From positions 248,001-312,000 of the IMG/VR virus record IMGVR_UViG_3300027759_006101: a stretch of DNA of 64,000 nucleotides; one strand, given 5' to 3'. The position numbers were made by a program, and so were the translations under genes. The notes under the pieces were generated by a model, which was given only the letters and a program-made list of their open reading frames with translations, did no database searches and was not told where the DNA came from. Positions 59,693 to 64,000 of the stretch are shown here, one piece after another; within the stretch, counting starts at the first letter, position 1; every line of letters begins with the position of its first letter.

Positions 59693-60184
59693 TCAGTCGG
59701 TATCGTCAGACATATAAGTTTCAAAATCCCAGTCTTCATCCAACTCATCCATATTGTCCCATACATTTCGTAAAACAAATAAATTTGTATGGGATAATAT
59801 GGATAAAATTAAACTATCAACAAGAGAACAAACAGAAAAATAATTATTTTTCTTATAATCAGTGAATTTTACAGATGCATATATGACATCTCCTACTCTG
59901 TTCTCTATACAAATACTTTCAACACTTGAATTATAATGATTCAGTAAACGCAAAAACATTTGATGTATGATCATAACGTGAGCGTTTAAGTGATAATCCT
60001 TAATAACAAAATTCAACAAACTAGCTTCGTACGGAGCAATCTCACAGGCCACTTTTTTCAACCCATCACTCAGTAATATAAAAACTCTGGTTTCAGAGTC
60101 TACTATTACTTTTTCTAAAAGGATAGGAATAGTTTCATAACGATCATCATTGTGAATATTATTTCTATCTATTTTTTTTGGCAT
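59693..60184 (-). CDS. bifunctional nuclease (DUF151/BFN) family protein
   Basis: IAPYEASLL, HQMF, ICIENRVGDVIYAS, VDSLILSI. Confidence 0.75.
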   Translation of the reverse strand: MPKKIDRNNIHNDDRYETIPILLEKVIVDSETRVFILLSDGLKKVACEIAPYEASLLNFVIKDYHLNAHVMIIHQMFLRLLNHYNSSVESICIENRVGDVIYASVKFTDYKKNNYFSVCSLVDSLILSILSHTNLFVLRNVWDNMDELDEDWDFETYMSDDTD

Positions 60185-60570
60185 TTTGAATTTCCTGTAT
60201 TACACACTCTGCAAAGTTTGCAAATTTTATTGTTTAATATATTTGAAAATATAAGCATCAATGAACCAATAATCATTAAGTAATTTATTTCTTTATGATC
60301 GGAATGCTTGTGTTCATTTAAAAAATAACCTGCAAATGTTATGATAATTCCTAAAGAGAAAAACCATAATATATTGTAATTTTTGTGAGTTTTGATTCCA
60401 AAGCAAACATTATAAATATTTATTGCGCAAGATATAAATAATAAAATAAATTCTATTTTTGAATCAAGCATCAAGTAAAGAGCTGAAGTAGGCAAAAATA
60501 TCATAAATAAAGGTAATATCGTGCAGTGCAAAACACAAACAATACTAGCTATATTTGCGAATTTTATCAT
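60169..60570 (-). CDS. MerC-domain membrane protein
   Basis: ASIVCVLHCTILP, four hydrophobic segments, His-rich loop EHKHSDH, C-terminal CKLCRVC. Confidence 0.8.
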   Translation of the reverse strand: MIKFANIASIVCVLHCTILPLFMIFLPTSALYLMLDSKIEFILLFISCAINIYNVCFGIKTHKNYNILWFFSLGIIITFAGYFLNEHKHSDHKEINYLMIIGSLMLIFSNILNNKICKLCRVCNTGNSKCQKK

Positions 60571-62261
60571 AGATTGACTTTCTTTTTTGCTATGTCATGA
60601 ACTTTTAGAGAGATTTCTTTAATAGTTTCTTTTGCACTTTCTAAGAGACTTGAAAGTAACTCAATATTGTGACTTTTGCCATCTTGTTCTATTGATTTCT
60701 TGAGATCTAGTAATTCATTAACATCAAGTTTATCTAAAACATTAGTTCTAAGTAATTCTTCAATTTGAATTTCACAATCATAAAGAAGATCGTGCATATT
60801 TGTAATCTTTCTAAAGTGCTCATCTTCGTCTTTGTGTTGTTGTGCTTCATCAATAATTTTTGATATTTCTTGACTTGATAACGACGATCTGCCTGTAATC
60901 TCAATGTCTTTTTCTATTCCATTATCCAAACTTGTGGCTTTGACTGAAAGAATTCCATTTGGATCAATTTGAAACGTGACTTCAAGTTTTGGCAATCCTC
61001 TTGGTTTTTCTTCTACCCCATCAAGTTTAAATTCCCCAAGCAACAAATTATCTACTGTTTTGGGTCTCTCTCCTTGATAAATCTTTACATCAACTTCTGT
61101 TTGATTATCATATGCAGTTGTAAAGATTTCCTTAACAACTGAGGGTACTTGAGTATTTCTGGGAATTAAGATACTCATAATCCCACCTTGTGTCTCTATA
61201 CCTAAAGAAAGTGGTGTAACATCAAGCAAATAAACTTCTCTGCTTGATTTTCCTGTCAAAACTGATGCTTGAATAGCTGCACCGACAGAAACAGCTTCGT
61301 CAGGATTAATTGACTTATTGGGCTTTTTTCCGAACTTTTCTTCTATTACTCTTTCTATTAGTGGAATTCTTGTACTGCCACCAACAAAAACAATTTCATC
61401 AATTTTGTCAGTTTTTAAATTAGCGTCTCGTAATGCATCATTGACACAGAGCATTGTTTTATCAATGTATGTCTTGATAGATTCTTCAAATTCTTCACGA
61501 TTAATCTTGAGTGGCTCTTTTCCAACCATTACATTAGCCACAGTCATATGAGAAAGCATCTTTTTAGTCTTCTCAGAGATATTTCTTAAATCAATCTGAT
61601 CTAAAGTAACATTAGTTTTGCTAAGAATTACTTTTCCAAGTGCTTCATCAAAATCAACACCACCAAGAGATGTATTACCAGATGTAGATTGAACGTGGAA
61701 GTCAACACCGTCCATAAGCTTAAGCAAGGTGACATCAAATGTTCCTCCGCCTAAGTCATATACTAAAATCGTTGCATCATTTTTCTTATCTAGACCATAT
61801 GCCAAAGATGCTGCAGTAGGTTCATTGATGATACGTAATACTTTAAGACCAGCTAATTCTCCAGCTGTTTTAGTAGATTGCCTTTGGTCGTTGTTGAAAT
61901 ATGCAGGGACAGTAATTACAGCTTCAGTTACTTCTTTGCCCAAATGCCTCTCTGCGCAATTTTTAAGATACTTTAGGATGTATGATGAAACTTCTTCTGG
62001 GCTGTAGGATTTGCTATTTATTTCAAATCTCTTATTAGTCCCCATTTGCCTCTTTACAACACGTATAGTATGAGAAAAGGGCAAATGCTGCTCCATATCA
62101 ACAGCATATTGCCCTACATAAATCTCATCACCAAAACTGACTACGCTGGGAGTAATTCTTTCACCTAAATCATTTGGGATAACTTCTGGCTGATCTTTGT
62201 CATTTACATAAGAAACTACACTAAAAGTACTTCCTAAATCAATTCCAATTGCGTAACTCAT
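60567..62261 (-). CDS. dnaK: Hsp70/DnaK chaperone, compact
   Basis: GIDLGST, TVPAYF, INEPTAA, DLGGGTFD, VGGSTRIP, NPDEAV, LLDVTPLSLGIET, QGER. Confidence 0.95.
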   Translation of the reverse strand: MSYAIGIDLGSTFSVVSYVNDKDQPEVIPNDLGERITPSVVSFGDEIYVGQYAVDMEQHLPFSHTIRVVKRQMGTNKRFEINSKSYSPEEVSSYILKYLKNCAERHLGKEVTEAVITVPAYFNNDQRQSTKTAGELAGLKVLRIINEPTAASLAYGLDKKNDATILVYDLGGGTFDVTLLKLMDGVDFHVQSTSGNTSLGGVDFDEALGKVILSKTNVTLDQIDLRNISEKTKKMLSHMTVANVMVGKEPLKINREEFEESIKTYIDKTMLCVNDALRDANLKTDKIDEIVFVGGSTRIPLIERVIEEKFGKKPNKSINPDEAVSVGAAIQASVLTGKSSREVYLLDVTPLSLGIETQGGIMSILIPRNTQVPSVVKEIFTTAYDNQTEVDVKIYQGERPKTVDNLLLGEFKLDGVEEKPRGLPKLEVTFQIDPNGILSVKATSLDNGIEKDIEITGRSSLSSQEISKIIDEAQQHKDEDEHFRKITNMHDLLYDCEIQIEELLRTNVLDKLDVNELLDLKKSIEQDGKSHNIELLSSLLESAKETIKEISLKVHDIAKKKVNL

Positions 62262-62277: not shown

Positions 62278-62631
62278 TTATTCAGGTTCTTCTGGTAATA
62301 CAGTTCCTCCAGGCACATATCCTTCCATCAATTCTTTGAGAGCATCTTTATTTTCAAGCTTTTTTCTAAACTCAAGACTTTCATTTTTTGTTATTGGCCC
62401 TATCGCTATATTTTTATCTTTGTCTTTTGGTAAATTGTCTTTATACTCGTGAGCCATTGACATTAATTGTATTATTGCAAAAGTATCTTTACATTTTGAA
62501 CAACGCATAATAGCGTAAACTTCTACTTCTGACTTAGGCAACCAACCCAAGTGAGATAATTTTGTAAATTGAGTTTTACAATTTCTATTAAGACAACACT
62601 TCGGTTTGCCGATGATAGTTTGATGGAACAT
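62278..62631 (-). CDS. zinc-finger protein; start corrected to MFHQ
   Basis: GGAGGT SD before ATG at 62631; CLNRNC and CSKC. Confidence 0.7.
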   Translation of the reverse strand: MFHQTIIGKPKCCLNRNCKTQFTKLSHLGWLPKSEVEVYAIMRCSKCKDTFAIIQLMSMAHEYKDNLPKDKDKNIAIGPITKNESLEFRKKLENKDALKELMEGYVPGGTVLPEEPE

Positions 62632-62796
62632 AGCACACCTCCAATGCACAAATGAGCAATTTAATATTCCTGTTAGAACAAAGCTTGACTTTTATTAAGA
62701 ACCATTAATAGGACAAAATAAACTTGATATTGTATACTATTATAGTCCACTGGCGGATAAATTGAGGCCAGTGGATATTTTTATGTAAGGAGGAAA

Positions 62797-62874
62797 ATGA
62801 TTATGAAGATTTTTGAACAACTTGAAGAAATGATGAATCAAGTAATTTCAGCATTATTCAACGTAGAATTGTAA
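62797..62874 (+). CDS. 25-aa small protein MIMKIFEQLEEMMNQVISALFNVEL (not in ORF track)
   Basis: TAAGGAGG SD, upstream TGTATACT and 9-bp hairpin, downstream hairpin with T-run. Confidence 0.6.
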   Translation: MIMKIFEQLEEMMNQVISALFNVEL

Positions 62875-62882
62875 GGTAACTT

Positions 62883-62909
62883 ATAATCTACAGCGTCGTA
62901 GATTATTTT
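62883..62909 (+). terminator. hairpin terminator between the small ORF and the convergent helicase
   Basis: ataatctac-agcgtc-gtagattat-ttt. Confidence 0.6.
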
Positions 62910-64000
62910 AATTCAAACATTTTCCAAGCTCGTTCATTCTTATAAACTTTCTTTCTCATATTTACGTGAGATCTCAAATTCTTATGACTTGAGGCAAAAT
63001 CAATAATAATAGCTTCAGGTTTTCCATTCTTTATAGAATCTTCAACATCTTTGCCTACACATCTTAAGACTCTTCCAACTTGCTGATAAGTTGTGACTGG
63101 TGATGAACTAGTCCCAGCAAGAATTAGACAAGAGATTTTAGGAGCATCAACACCAACATTTGCCCACTGTGTTGCAATCAAGACTATTTCATTATTCTCA
63201 ACTGCATTAAGCATTCTTCGACGATAATTCTTTTCCTCATCGCTTGGGTCTATTTCGCCTTTATCGCCACCAGGTACAAATACTGCGTCCTCTATCATTC
63301 CTTCAAGAATATTGCCGTGTTCCATCCTTTCAACAAGAATAAGAGTAGGAGTACCCTTTTTTTTCATAGCTTCGGCAAATTGTTTTATTCTAAAATTTCT
63401 TTCCCAGCAATTAACAATATTTAAATTGTAAACTTCATGATAAGTTTGGCCAGGTTCTACAGTATCTATATTTACTACAAAGATTTTGGGTGGAACTAAG
63501 TACCCTCTCTCCACGAGATCACTGGCACTTACTTCGCATACTTTACCGCCCAAAGTACCTTCTATCCTGATTTCTTGATTATCGGTACGAAAGGGAGTTG
63601 CAGATAAACCCAATCTGTAATATGCATTCTTTGCTTGATTACCAATTTCTTCAGTAACAACAGCTGCTAAATGTGCTTCGTCTATAATCAAAGCATTACA
63701 GTTCTTGATTACATCTCTGACTTGAGATTTTTGAAATAATATATTCTGCCTATTGTCCCAAGCTGATTGAGCTTTCTTATAATCTGACAATTCTTTTTTT
63801 ACTAAGATTGACAATTCACGATCATACTGTTTTCGTAATTGAATTAAGTTTTTTGCAGAACTTTCTTCAGCTTTTTCAACTTTCTCATACAAGTCTGAAA
63901 GTTTTCCTGAAGCCACATGAGTTGCTTTTTTGTAGTTTGATAGAGCTACTTCTAATTCTTTTTGAAGAAAAGCAGTTGGTTTACTTCCTTCCCCATTATC
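62903..64000 (-). CDS. superfamily 2 DEAH helicase (UvsW/XPB-like), 5' end beyond window
   Basis: IIDEAH, SATPFR, VGVDAP, QQVGRVLR; frame open to the window edge. Confidence 0.9.
   Translation of the reverse strand, partial: DNGEGSKPTAFLQKELEVALSNYKKATHVASGKLSDLYEKVEKAEESSAKNLIQLRKQYDRELSILVKKELSDYKKAQSAWDNRQNILFQKSQVRDVIKNCNALIIDEAHLAAVVTEEIGNQAKNAYYRLGLSATPFRTDNQEIRIEGTLGGKVCEVSASDLVERGYLVPPKIFVVNIDTVEPGQTYHEVYNLNIVNCWERNFRIKQFAEAMKKKGTPTLILVERMEHGNILEGMIEDAVFVPGGDKGEIDPSDEEKNYRRRMLNAVENNEIVLIATQWANVGVDAPKISCLILAGTSSSPVTTYQQVGRVLRCVGKDVEDSIKNGKPEAIIIDFASSHKNLRSHVNMRKKVYKNERAWKMFELK

What the first reader, a model, noticed from the sequence alone, without database searches (positions are those of the whole stretch)
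62731..62909. Hidden self-contained transcription unit for a 25-aa peptide, opposite to its neighbours
Seen: TGTATACT (62731-62738), then a 9-bp GC-rich hairpin starting where transcription should begin (62746-62775), a perfect TAAGGAGG SD, ORF MIMKIFEQLEEMMNQVISALFNVEL (62797-62874) and a terminator-like hairpin overlapping the helicase stop. All flanking genes are on the minus strand. The peptide has amphipathic acidic-helix periodicity. Inference: a stable, strongly translated early mRNA of about 165 nt for a host-takeover or anti-defence micro-protein, or a dual-function sRNA antisense to helicase read-through.
Basis: partly seen in the sequence, partly recalled or inferred. Interest (0 to 1): 0.7.

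Follow-up and report, generated by a model that had tools for sequence, protein, structure and literature searches.

The report
Conserved 23-residue phage microprotein gene
A tiny unannotated gene for a 23-amino-acid acidic helical peptide sits backwards between two larger genes of an uncultured freshwater jumbo phage. It has its own promoter-like and terminator-like signals and recurs across more than a hundred related phage DNA fragments, so it is almost certainly real, but its job is unknown.

Summary
Comparison with relatives shows the features are not chance. The window is part of a 358-kb freshwater jumbo-phage record.

- **ORF conservation:** about 110 related loci, nearly all with helicase at least 60% identical, carry the same plus-strand small ORF. 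That gives 61 distinct nucleotide versions and 51 distinct peptides, always 22-24 codons.
- **Coding signature:** codon-position entropy is 0.93/0.46/1.20 and median pairwise dN/dS is 0.32. The other five frames are mostly closed.
- **Translation signals:** all 65 unique units have a strong Shine-Dalgarno 5-9 nt before the start. The conserved start is the second ATG (62803), so the product is 23 aa, not 25.
- **Promoter and hairpins:** a TATAAT-type -10 box and both hairpins are conserved. The hairpins show compensatory changes, and their wobble pairs fit the plus-strand RNA.
- **5' hairpin:** it begins at the predicted +1. It is also a textbook intrinsic terminator (about -18 kcal/mol, at least 6 U in the next 9 nt in all 50 relatives). 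It could therefore be a stabiliser, an attenuator, or the body of a roughly 40-nt RNA.
- **Peptide:** an acidic amphipathic helix with no Pfam, PHROG or Rfam match.

Transcription, timing and target remain untested. This is a new family of a known kind, the phage microprotein gene.

The parts
62710..62715 (+). -35-position box AGGACA, 17 nt upstream of the -10
   Evidence: Found by the promoter scan. An AGG-containing box (wAGGw) sits at the same 17-18 nt distance from the -10 in nearly all relatives of every architecture. It is not TTGACA, and this box class is not enriched genome-wide.
62733..62738 (+). -10 box TATACT (TATAAT in most relatives), preceded by a conserved G
   Evidence: In alignment A4 of 50 units, the A at hexamer position 2 is invariant. 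T1, T3, A4, T6 and the preceding G are at least 90% conserved, while the spacer varies.
62745..62776 (+). Hairpin 1: 10-bp GC-rich stem with a 12-nt loop, starting at the predicted +1
   Evidence: Supported by the fold and the RNAalifold consensus. Five of 10 pairs show compensatory changes, and 98.4% of cells are paired. Median dG is -18.5 kcal/mol. The core CCRCUG/CAGYGG and the first two loop bases (GG) are invariant. The motif is unique in the genome.
62778..62782 (+). U tract after hairpin 1
   Evidence: All 50 aligned relatives have at least 6 U in the 9 nt after the stem. Together with hairpin 1 this gives the signature of an intrinsic terminator on the plus strand.
62786..62793 (+). 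Shine-Dalgarno TAAGGAGG
   Evidence: An SD is present in 65 of 65 unique units: AAGGAGG 34, AGGAGG 12, AAGGAG 10, others 9. It lies 5-9 nt before the conserved start. It is the strongest SD class in this genome.
62803..62874 (+). Microprotein ORF, 23 codons plus stop: MKIFEQLEEMMNQVISALFNVEL
   Evidence: There are 61 unique nucleotide versions and 51 unique peptides, all 22-24 codons. Codon-position entropy is 0.93/0.46/1.20 and median dN/dS is 0.32. Other frames are mostly closed. An HMM of the family hits 107 loci at E<1e-3, plus a TTG-start variant in 4 more.
62883..62906 (+). Hairpin 2 (9 bp, 6-nt loop) plus a short U tract to 62909. It is the terminator-like 3' end and overlaps the helicase stop codon.
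   Evidence: Part of the RNAalifold consensus. Three of 7 pairs show compensatory changes and 99.7% of cells are paired. dG is about -8.5 kcal/mol, with 4-6 U in the next 9 nt.
62903..64000 (-). Convergent neighbour: 3' part of a 483-aa SF2 helicase (ResIII + Helicase_C)
62278..62631 (-). Divergent neighbour: 117-aa Cys-rich protein of unknown function, followed by Hsp70 (60567-62261)
   Evidence: The start at 62631 is preceded by GGAGGTG.

Best explanation
The locus is a real, independently expressed gene for a 23-residue microprotein, missed by annotation because it is shorter than gene-caller limits.

**Proposed expression path**
- Host-type RNA polymerase starts about 62744-62746 from a conserved TATAAT-like -10 box that has a non-consensus -35 box.
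- The first 32 nt fold into a very stable stem-loop followed by a U tract.
- Transcripts that continue carry the strongest Shine-Dalgarno in the genome. They are translated from ATG 62803.
- They end at a weaker hairpin that overlaps the stop codon of the convergent helicase gene, giving an RNA of about 165 nt.

**Proposed mode of action**
- The product is an acidic amphipathic alpha-helix with one continuous hydrophobic stripe at positions 3/4, 7, 10/11, 14/15, 18/19 and 23. Glu8 and Phe19 are nearly invariant.
- It is too short to fold alone. It most likely works stoichiometrically, by laying that stripe onto a partner protein or by bundling with itself.

**Shown versus inferred**
- Shown: conservation of the ORF, SD, -10 box and both RNA hairpins.
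- Inferred: the transcription start, the balance between termination and read-through at hairpin 1, the helical binder mechanism, and the partner.
For: - **Breadth:** the ORF is kept at 22-24 codons in 61 distinct nucleotide versions, in relatives whose helicase is mostly 60-100% identical.
- **Coding signature:** codon-position entropy 0.93/0.46/1.20 and median dN/dS 0.32. Alternative frames are open in 0, 1, 7, 23 and 0 of 61 versions.
- **Translation signals:** an SD in 65/65 units at 5-9 nt from the conserved start.
- **Promoter:** the -10 box is conserved while the spacer varies.
- **RNA structure:** both hairpins covary. Cells paired are 98.9% against 88.5% in shuffles. Double-change cells number 89 against 23. 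Slid controls give 21-53%.
- **Strand:** about 15 G.U cells fit the plus strand against 1 A.C cell.
- **Helix signature:** hydrophobic moment 0.45 against 0.19 for shuffles. There is no Pro, Cys or Trp in 51 variants. Net charge is -4 to 0.
- **Persistence across contexts:** the peptide gene survives with its own terminator (window type, L157 type). It survives translationally coupled to a cargo gene 2 nt downstream (L015/L016 type). It also survives directly divergent from Hsp70 (L018 type).
Against: - There is no direct RNA or protein evidence. RNA-library contigs over the unit are unstranded, of read length, and no deeper than the flanks.
- The -35 box is not consensus, and a single-sequence promoter scan is at chance level.
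- Hairpin 1 looks like an efficient terminator. It might stop most transcripts before the ORF.
- The peptide search used a pattern and then an HMM built from the hits, which favours finding family-like ORFs. Presence in nearly every locus with enough flank argues this is not circular.
- One lineage (L057/L162) lacks the gene.
- No function can be assigned by homology.
Confidence: 0.75

Rival explanations
1. Two-output locus or attenuator. Hairpin 1 with its U tract is a working promoter-proximal intrinsic terminator. Most transcripts end about 35-40 nt from the start, as a small hairpin RNA that may itself be regulatory or protein-bound. The microprotein is made only when termination is bypassed, by a phage antiterminator or by physiological conditions. 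The logic would resemble lambda PR'-tR' with Q.
For: - Hairpin 1 is the 8th most stable of 86 terminator-like hairpins in the genome.
- All 50 relatives keep at least 6 U in the next 9 nt.
- The stem core and the first two loop bases are invariant while outer pairs covary. That suggests sequence-specific recognition.
- The 12-nt loop is unusually large. One search lists the loop sizes of the 86 terminator-like hairpins, and most are 3-5 nt.
- The real 3' terminator is much weaker.
Against: - No room exists for an alternative antiterminator fold upstream, because the hairpin starts at +1.
- No antiterminator gene has been identified.
- The motif is unique in the genome, so it is not a regulon signal.
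- Relatives with other leader types (L015, L018, L149) lack the hairpin yet keep the peptide.
- A 5'-terminal stem-loop that protects the mRNA would look the same, apart from the U tract.
Confidence: 0.35
2. Mainly an antisense or insulator RNA. The helicase, 117-aa, Hsp70, MerC-like and nuclease-like genes form one minus-strand operon with no minus-strand terminator in the 271-nt spacer. The plus-strand transcript would pair with read-through RNA, or collide with the polymerase making it. That would uncouple helicase from the chaperone genes. The ORF would be secondary.
For: - No minus-strand terminator-like site lies between 62632 and 62902.
- Both hairpins have U tracts only in the plus orientation.
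- The unit is always placed between the helicase and the 117-aa/Hsp70 genes.
Against: - Amino-acid-level conservation and fixed ORF length are not explained by an antisense role. Nor is the universally strong SD at correct spacing.
- A separate minus-strand promoter for the 117-aa/Hsp70 genes may exist in the same spacer but could not be assigned.
- The two roles are not mutually exclusive.
Confidence: 0.2
3. A ribosome-loading upstream ORF. The small ORF exists to deliver ribosomes by termination-reinitiation to a downstream cargo gene, as in relatives where a 241-247-aa gene starts 2 nt after its stop. In the window it would be a remnant after the cargo was lost.
For: In the L015/L016/L127 type, the peptide stop is followed 2 nt later by the ATG of gene X, which has no good SD of its own.
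Against: - Most lineages have no downstream same-strand gene and instead have a covarying terminator hairpin.
- The peptide sequence is under purifying selection in those lineages too.
- L157/L159 place a terminator between the peptide gene and the next gene.
Confidence: 0.1

Closest known systems
Small-gene families of phages and microbiomes found by comparative genomics (catalogues of smORFs under 100 codons, e.g. PMC11364881; large phage small-gene surveys recalled from my own knowledge)
   Same: It is an unannotated ORF far below gene-caller length limits. It is recognised by conservation, codon-position pattern and an SD. Function is unknown.
   Different: This one has a fully delimited transcription unit with covarying RNA hairpins, a fixed syntenic slot in one jumbo-phage clade, and no match in Pfam or PHROGs. 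Whether it is already listed in such catalogues could not be checked, because searches refuse queries under 30-40 aa.
Phage T4 Stp, a 26-residue host-interaction peptide (own knowledge, not tested here)
   Same: It is a phage-encoded peptide of about 25 residues that acts by binding a host protein complex. This is a precedent for function at this size.
   Different: No sequence comparison was made. Stp is not reported as an acidic amphipathic helix with this heptad-like stripe. The target and timing of the present peptide are unknown.
5'-terminal stabilising stem-loops of bacterial and phage mRNAs, ompA type (own knowledge)
   Same: It is a stable stem-loop beginning within 0-2 nt of the predicted 5' end, upstream of the SD and not occluding it.
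   Different: A conserved U tract follows the stem, giving terminator anatomy that a stabiliser does not need. The stem core and two loop bases are invariant.
Promoter-proximal terminators read through by antitermination (lambda PR'-tR'/Q, 6S RNA; own knowledge)
   Same: A promoter is followed closely by a strong intrinsic terminator, with the gene beyond it.
   Different: The terminator starts at +1 rather than about +190. No Q-like factor or binding element has been identified. Only one very small gene lies downstream.
Type I toxin-antitoxin toxins and other small membrane peptides
   Same: It is a small ORF with a structured 5' UTR, a strong SD and its own terminator, placed antisense to neighbours.
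   Different: The peptide has charged or polar residues every 3-4 positions, net charge -4 to 0, and no transmembrane stretch. No cognate antisense RNA gene has been identified.

Membership tests
Translated small protein gene (sORF) | ORF presence and length conserved across diverged relatives | tested here: met
   61 unique nucleotide versions, all 22-24 codons. The family HMM hits 107 loci, plus 4 TTG-start variants. It is absent only in L057/L162 and replaced by a 34-aa ORF in L053.
Translated small protein gene (sORF) | Substitution pattern of a coding sequence (third position most variable, second least; dN/dS below 1) | tested here: met
   Entropy is 0.93/0.46/1.20 and median pairwise dN/dS is 0.32 over 1106 pairs. 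The +1 and +2 frames are closed in 60-61 of 61 versions. The test was pairwise, not tree-aware.
Translated small protein gene (sORF) | Ribosome-binding site at functional spacing | tested here: met
   An SD is present in 65/65 unique units, 5-9 nt before the conserved start. SD-like motifs are about 5-fold enriched before long ORFs of this genome.
Translated small protein gene (sORF) | Direct evidence of translation (Ribo-seq, mass spectrometry, tagged fusion) | not testable with these tools
   No such data are available for this uncultured phage.
Autonomous sigma-70-type transcription unit | -10 hexamer with conserved A at position 2 and T at position 6 | tested here: met
   A is invariant and T is at least 90% conserved in 50 aligned units, while the spacer varies. 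The same holds across other architectures.
Autonomous sigma-70-type transcription unit | -35 hexamer close to TTGACA at 16-18 nt | tested here: not met
   The box is AGGACA or wAGGw. TTGACA-N16-18-TATAAT sites do exist elsewhere in the genome, 20 against 8 expected.
Autonomous sigma-70-type transcription unit | Plus-strand transcript with mapped 5' and 3' ends | tested here: inconclusive
   Contigs from RNA-labelled libraries cover the unit but are unstranded, of read length, and similar in depth to the flanks. DNA carry-over cannot be excluded.
Intrinsic (Rho-independent) terminator | GC-rich stem directly followed by a U tract on the transcribed strand | tested here: met
   Hairpin 1 has median dG -18.5 and at least 6 U of 9 in 50/50 relatives. 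Hairpin 2 has dG -8.5 and 4-6 U of 9. Both covary. Termination activity itself is not testable here.
5'-terminal mRNA stabiliser stem-loop | Stem begins within a few nt of the 5' end and raises mRNA half-life | tested here: inconclusive
   Geometry fits: the stem starts 7 nt after the -10 box in the window and 7-11 nt after it in relatives. The 5' end and the half-life are unmeasured.
Leader-peptide attenuator (trp type) | Leader ORF followed by alternative terminator/antiterminator folds and same-strand structural genes | tested here: not met
   The terminator-like hairpin 1 lies upstream of the ORF. No same-strand gene follows in the window. RNAalifold finds only the two independent hairpins.
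Type I toxin-antitoxin toxin | Hydrophobic, membrane-spanning small peptide | tested here: not met
   Mean GRAVY is 0.35, with charged or polar residues at regular 3-4 residue intervals and net charge -4 to 0.
Known RNA or protein families (Rfam, Pfam, PHROGs) | Significant match to a curated model | tested here: not met
   Rfam gathering threshold and E<=5: no match. Pfam: none. PHROGs: best E 0.07-0.09, not significant.

The most novel reading that the evidence does not exclude
The locus is a compact two-output switch kept across a whole clade of uncultured freshwater jumbo phages. A promoter fires straight into a sequence-specific terminator hairpin with an invariant CCRCUG/CAGYGG core and a GG loop start. 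This yields a roughly 40-nt hairpin RNA by default. Only regulated read-through produces a very highly translated 23-residue acidic helix that acts as a stoichiometric modulator of a host or phage protein. The target could be, for example, the neighbouring chaperone or replication machinery.
Probability: 0.2. Interest if true: 0.65.

Novelty: new member of a known kind. Interest (0 to 1): 0.45.

Why it matters
Jumbo-phage genomes are annotated with gene callers that cannot see 23-codon genes. This case shows that a complete, strongly expressed-looking gene can hide in a 271-nt 'intergenic' spacer and be among the most persistently conserved features of its neighbourhood.

The family is a clean test case for three reasons:
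- It has a defined promoter, leader, SD, ORF and terminator within 200 nt.
- It offers dozens of natural sequence variants.
- The peptide is small enough to synthesise chemically.

Identifying its partner would add a new microprotein mechanism to phage biology. Resolving the 5' hairpin would show whether promoter-adjacent terminators are used as switches in these phages.

Tried and rejected
- **Near-identity search of 4 kb against deposited phages:** no match. The closest cultured phage helicases are below 30% identical, so no annotated relative exists.
- **Rfam, whole window and local permissive search:** nothing.
- **Pfam and PHROGs for the peptide, the 117-aa neighbour and cargo gene X:** nothing significant.
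- **Large protein database and genome-contig searches:** The family's presence outside this clade is therefore untested. A viral-contig scan with the peptide alignment returned only the same clade.
- **Public RNA libraries, both allowed read-laying runs:** only unstranded Logan contigs of about read length, partly from relatives. They give no strand, no ends and no excess depth. This is no evidence either way.
- **Complex prediction of the peptide with the phage Hsp70 and the 117-aa protein:** no verdict (score 0.01, partner pLDDT below 50, and the peptide is shorter than anything in the calibration set). It is not evidence for or against binding.
- **Paralogue search in the genome by peptide pattern:** none.
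- **Hairpin-1 motif search in the genome:** unique.
- **Long-range 5'-3' pairing that sequesters the start codon in the single-sequence fold:** not part of the alignment consensus, so dropped.
- **Idea that the conserved AGG box is the -35 of a divergent minus-strand promoter:** the TTG part is not conserved in close relatives, and the box keeps a fixed distance to the plus-strand -10 instead. Left open.
- **Link to the published 'moraphage' lineage of aquatic jumbo phages with DnaK (PMC12619734):** could not be established from the text. SD usage and TTGACA/TATAAT promoters here do not suggest a Bacteroidota host.

Full report
**Context.** The window is bases 248001-312000 of a 358-kb virus record from freshwater metagenomes, with 33.7% G+C. 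The finding lies in a 271-nt spacer between two minus-strand genes. One is the stop of a 483-aa SF2 helicase (ResIII + Helicase_C, stop at 62903-62905). The other is the start of a 117-aa Cys-rich protein (ATG at 62631, preceded by GGAGGTG). That gene is followed by Hsp70, a MerC-like protein and a nuclease-like protein. No deposited phage is close.

**The observation.**
- The -10 box is TATACT at 62733-62738. Its TG abuts the hexamer and so is not a correctly spaced extended -10.
- Hairpin 1 spans 62745-62776 (10 bp, 12-nt loop) and is followed by five T.
- TAAGGAGG lies at 62786-62793.
- An open frame runs 62797-62874.
- Hairpin 2 spans 62883-62906 and overlaps the helicase stop.

Taken alone these are weak. 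The promoter scan finds as many sites as in shuffled sequence. AAGGAGG occurs 13 times in the genome, roughly as composition predicts by my own estimate. The 176-nt RNA does fold better than shuffles, with z = -4.5.

**Comparative evidence for a coding gene.** I searched viral and metagenome contigs with the helicase. In the loci found, I examined the DNA just beyond the helicase stop.
- An HMM of the small ORF hits 107 loci at E<1e-3. Four more carry a TTG-start version.
- Nearly all of these loci have helicase at least 60% identical to the window's.
- After removing duplicates there are 65 unique units, 61 unique ORF sequences and 51 unique peptides. All are 22-24 codons.
- Variability by codon position is 0.93/0.46/1.20 bits. 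Median pairwise dN/dS is 0.32. The +1, +2 and one antisense frame are closed in essentially all versions.
- All 65 units have a Shine-Dalgarno (AAGGAGG in 34), 5-9 nt before the conserved start.
The product is therefore MKIFEQLEEMMNQVISALFNVEL, 23 residues, from 62803.
- SD motifs are genuinely used by this phage, with about 5-fold enrichment before long ORFs. Among 301 long ORFs, none has the full AAGGAGG, one has AGGAGG and five have GGAGG.

**Comparative evidence for the RNA signals.** In a 50-sequence alignment of the window-type units, the -10 hexamer is conserved. The A at position 2 is invariant. T1, T3, A4, T6 and the preceding G are at least 90% conserved. The spacer upstream varies.

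An AGG-containing box lies 17-18 nt upstream in nearly all architectures. It is not TTGACA. TTGACA-N16-18-TATAAT sites are enriched elsewhere in the genome, whereas the AGG-box class is not.

RNAalifold returns exactly the two hairpins. Pair counting gives:

| Measure | Observed | Control |
|---|---|---|
| Cells paired | 98.9% | 88.5% in column shuffles |
| Double-change cells | 89 | 23 in column shuffles |
| Cells paired when the 3' partner is slid | - | 21-53% |
| Pairs with compensatory changes | 8 of 17 | - |

About 15 G.U cells fit the plus-strand RNA, against 1 A.C cell that would fit the minus strand. These are few independent events, so the strand support is modest. The U tracts are on the plus strand only.

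**What hairpin 1 is.** Its stem starts 7 nt after the -10 box, at the expected first transcribed base. However, several features go beyond what a stabiliser needs:
- Median stability is -18.5 kcal/mol.
- All 50 relatives keep at least 6 U in the next 9 nt.
- It ranks 8th of 86 terminator-like hairpins in this genome, well above the unit's own 3' hairpin at -8.5.
- Its core (CCRCUG/CAGYGG) and the first two loop bases (GG) never vary while outer pairs covary.
- Its loop is unusually long.
- The motif occurs once in the genome.

I therefore keep two readings open. It may be a stabiliser. Or it may be a promoter-proximal terminator or attenuator that would release a roughly 40-nt hairpin RNA and gate expression of the peptide. 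Relatives with other leader types lack this hairpin but keep the peptide. The peptide, not the hairpin, is thus the universally conserved element.

**Other architectures.** Four variants were found:
- In one clade (L015/L016/L127 type), the peptide stop is followed 2 nt later by a 241-247-aa gene with no Pfam match, which then converges on the helicase.
- In L157/L159, the peptide has its own terminator and a methyltransferase gene follows.
- In L018/L019, the 117-aa gene is missing and the unit is divergent from Hsp70.
- L053 (helicase 51% identical) has a 34-aa ORF with a similar N-terminus in the same slot, and L057/L162 has none.

The slot between the peptide gene and the helicase stop thus accepts cargo, while the peptide gene persists.

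**The peptide.** Across 51 variants:
- Net charge is -4 to 0.
- There is no Pro, Cys or Trp.
- The helical hydrophobic moment is 0.45 against 0.19 for shuffles. Fewer than 1% of shuffles reach it.
- Hydrophobic residues occupy positions 3/4, 7, 10/11, 14/15, 18/19 and 23.
- Glu8, Phe19, a basic or Asn residue at 20 and an acidic residue at 22 are nearly fixed.

This is the signature of a single amphipathic helix with one wide hydrophobic face. It is not a membrane-spanning peptide, so a type I toxin is unlikely. The conserved sequence and the absence of a downstream gene in most lineages argue against a mere leader or coupling ORF. I infer a stoichiometric helical binder or a self-bundling peptide, which would also suit the very strong SD. 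The partner is unknown. A structure-prediction test against the neighbouring Hsp70 and 117-aa protein gave no verdict and is not evidence either way.

**Expression evidence.** Public RNA-labelled libraries that contain the sequence are held only as unstranded contigs of about read length, some from relatives, at depths like the flanks. They neither show nor exclude a plus-strand transcript. One such contig, from a relative, lacks the first ATG, consistent with the start assignment.

**Verdict.** The core interpretation, a hidden and self-contained unit for a translated amphipathic micro-peptide, is well supported by comparative genomics, with the length corrected to 23 aa. Timing, target and any antisense or sRNA role are untested. 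The terminator-like nature of the 5' hairpin is the one feature that goes beyond an ordinary small gene. I file it as a new family of a known kind (phage microprotein genes) with moderate interest.

Noticed in passing
window 62693-62710: An inverted repeat, TATTAA ... TTAATA, lies just upstream of and abutting the AGG box. In close relatives it is a 7-bp perfect palindrome (TATTAAG-N4-CTTAATA). It could be an operator shared by the divergent promoters.
   Followed up: partly
window 62747-62759: The hairpin-1 arm and loop start, CCACTGGCGG followed by ATA, resembles the core of the lambda OL1 operator as I recall it from memory. Probably coincidence. It was not checked against a sequence.
   Followed up: no
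window 62783-62788: A minimal start-stop ORF (ATG TAA) overlaps the first bases of the SD. Many relatives have GTG TAA there, others do not. T and G at these positions are nearly invariant after the U tract.
   Followed up: partly
window 62278-62631 (minus) and relatives L015:6471-6827, L149:2189-2545: A conserved 117-118-aa Cys-rich protein (CxxxxC ... CxxC) with no Pfam or PHROG match always precedes the phage Hsp70 gene by 15-17 nt. It is absent in L018/L019. It may be a chaperone accessory.
   Followed up: partly
window 59693-62261 (minus): Phage-encoded Hsp70 (564 aa, E 1e-159) is followed by a MerC-like membrane protein and a weak bifunctional-nuclease-domain protein. This is an unusual gene set for a phage replication-region operon.
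   Followed up: no
L015:5481-6224, L016:5481-6206, L157:1913-2617: Variable cargo genes sit between the peptide gene and the helicase stop in some relatives. One is a 241-247-aa protein without any Pfam match, translationally coupled to the peptide ORF. Another is a Methyltransf_24-type methyltransferase.
   Followed up: partly
L053:4488-4589 (minus strand of locus): A more distant relative (helicase 51% identical) has a 34-aa ORF, MKKFLKEF..., with its own SD, TATAAT box and leader hairpin in the same slot. It may be a diverged, extended homologue.
   Followed up: partly
genome G000:C1 about 157000-185000 (outside the window): A dense series of strong terminator hairpins is directly followed by TTGACA-type promoters (T run fused to TTGACA), many with related stems (ATCCCAAGA / TATCCCTTGAC). 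It looks like an early region of many short transcription units.
   Followed up: no
L151 and L156, about 100-170 nt beyond the helicase stop: In this sub-clade the peptide gene starts with TTG, and the leader carries a conserved UUCAAUGUCGA motif instead of hairpin 1. A related motif (UUCAUUGUCGA) occurs in the L015 and L149 leader types.
   Followed up: partly
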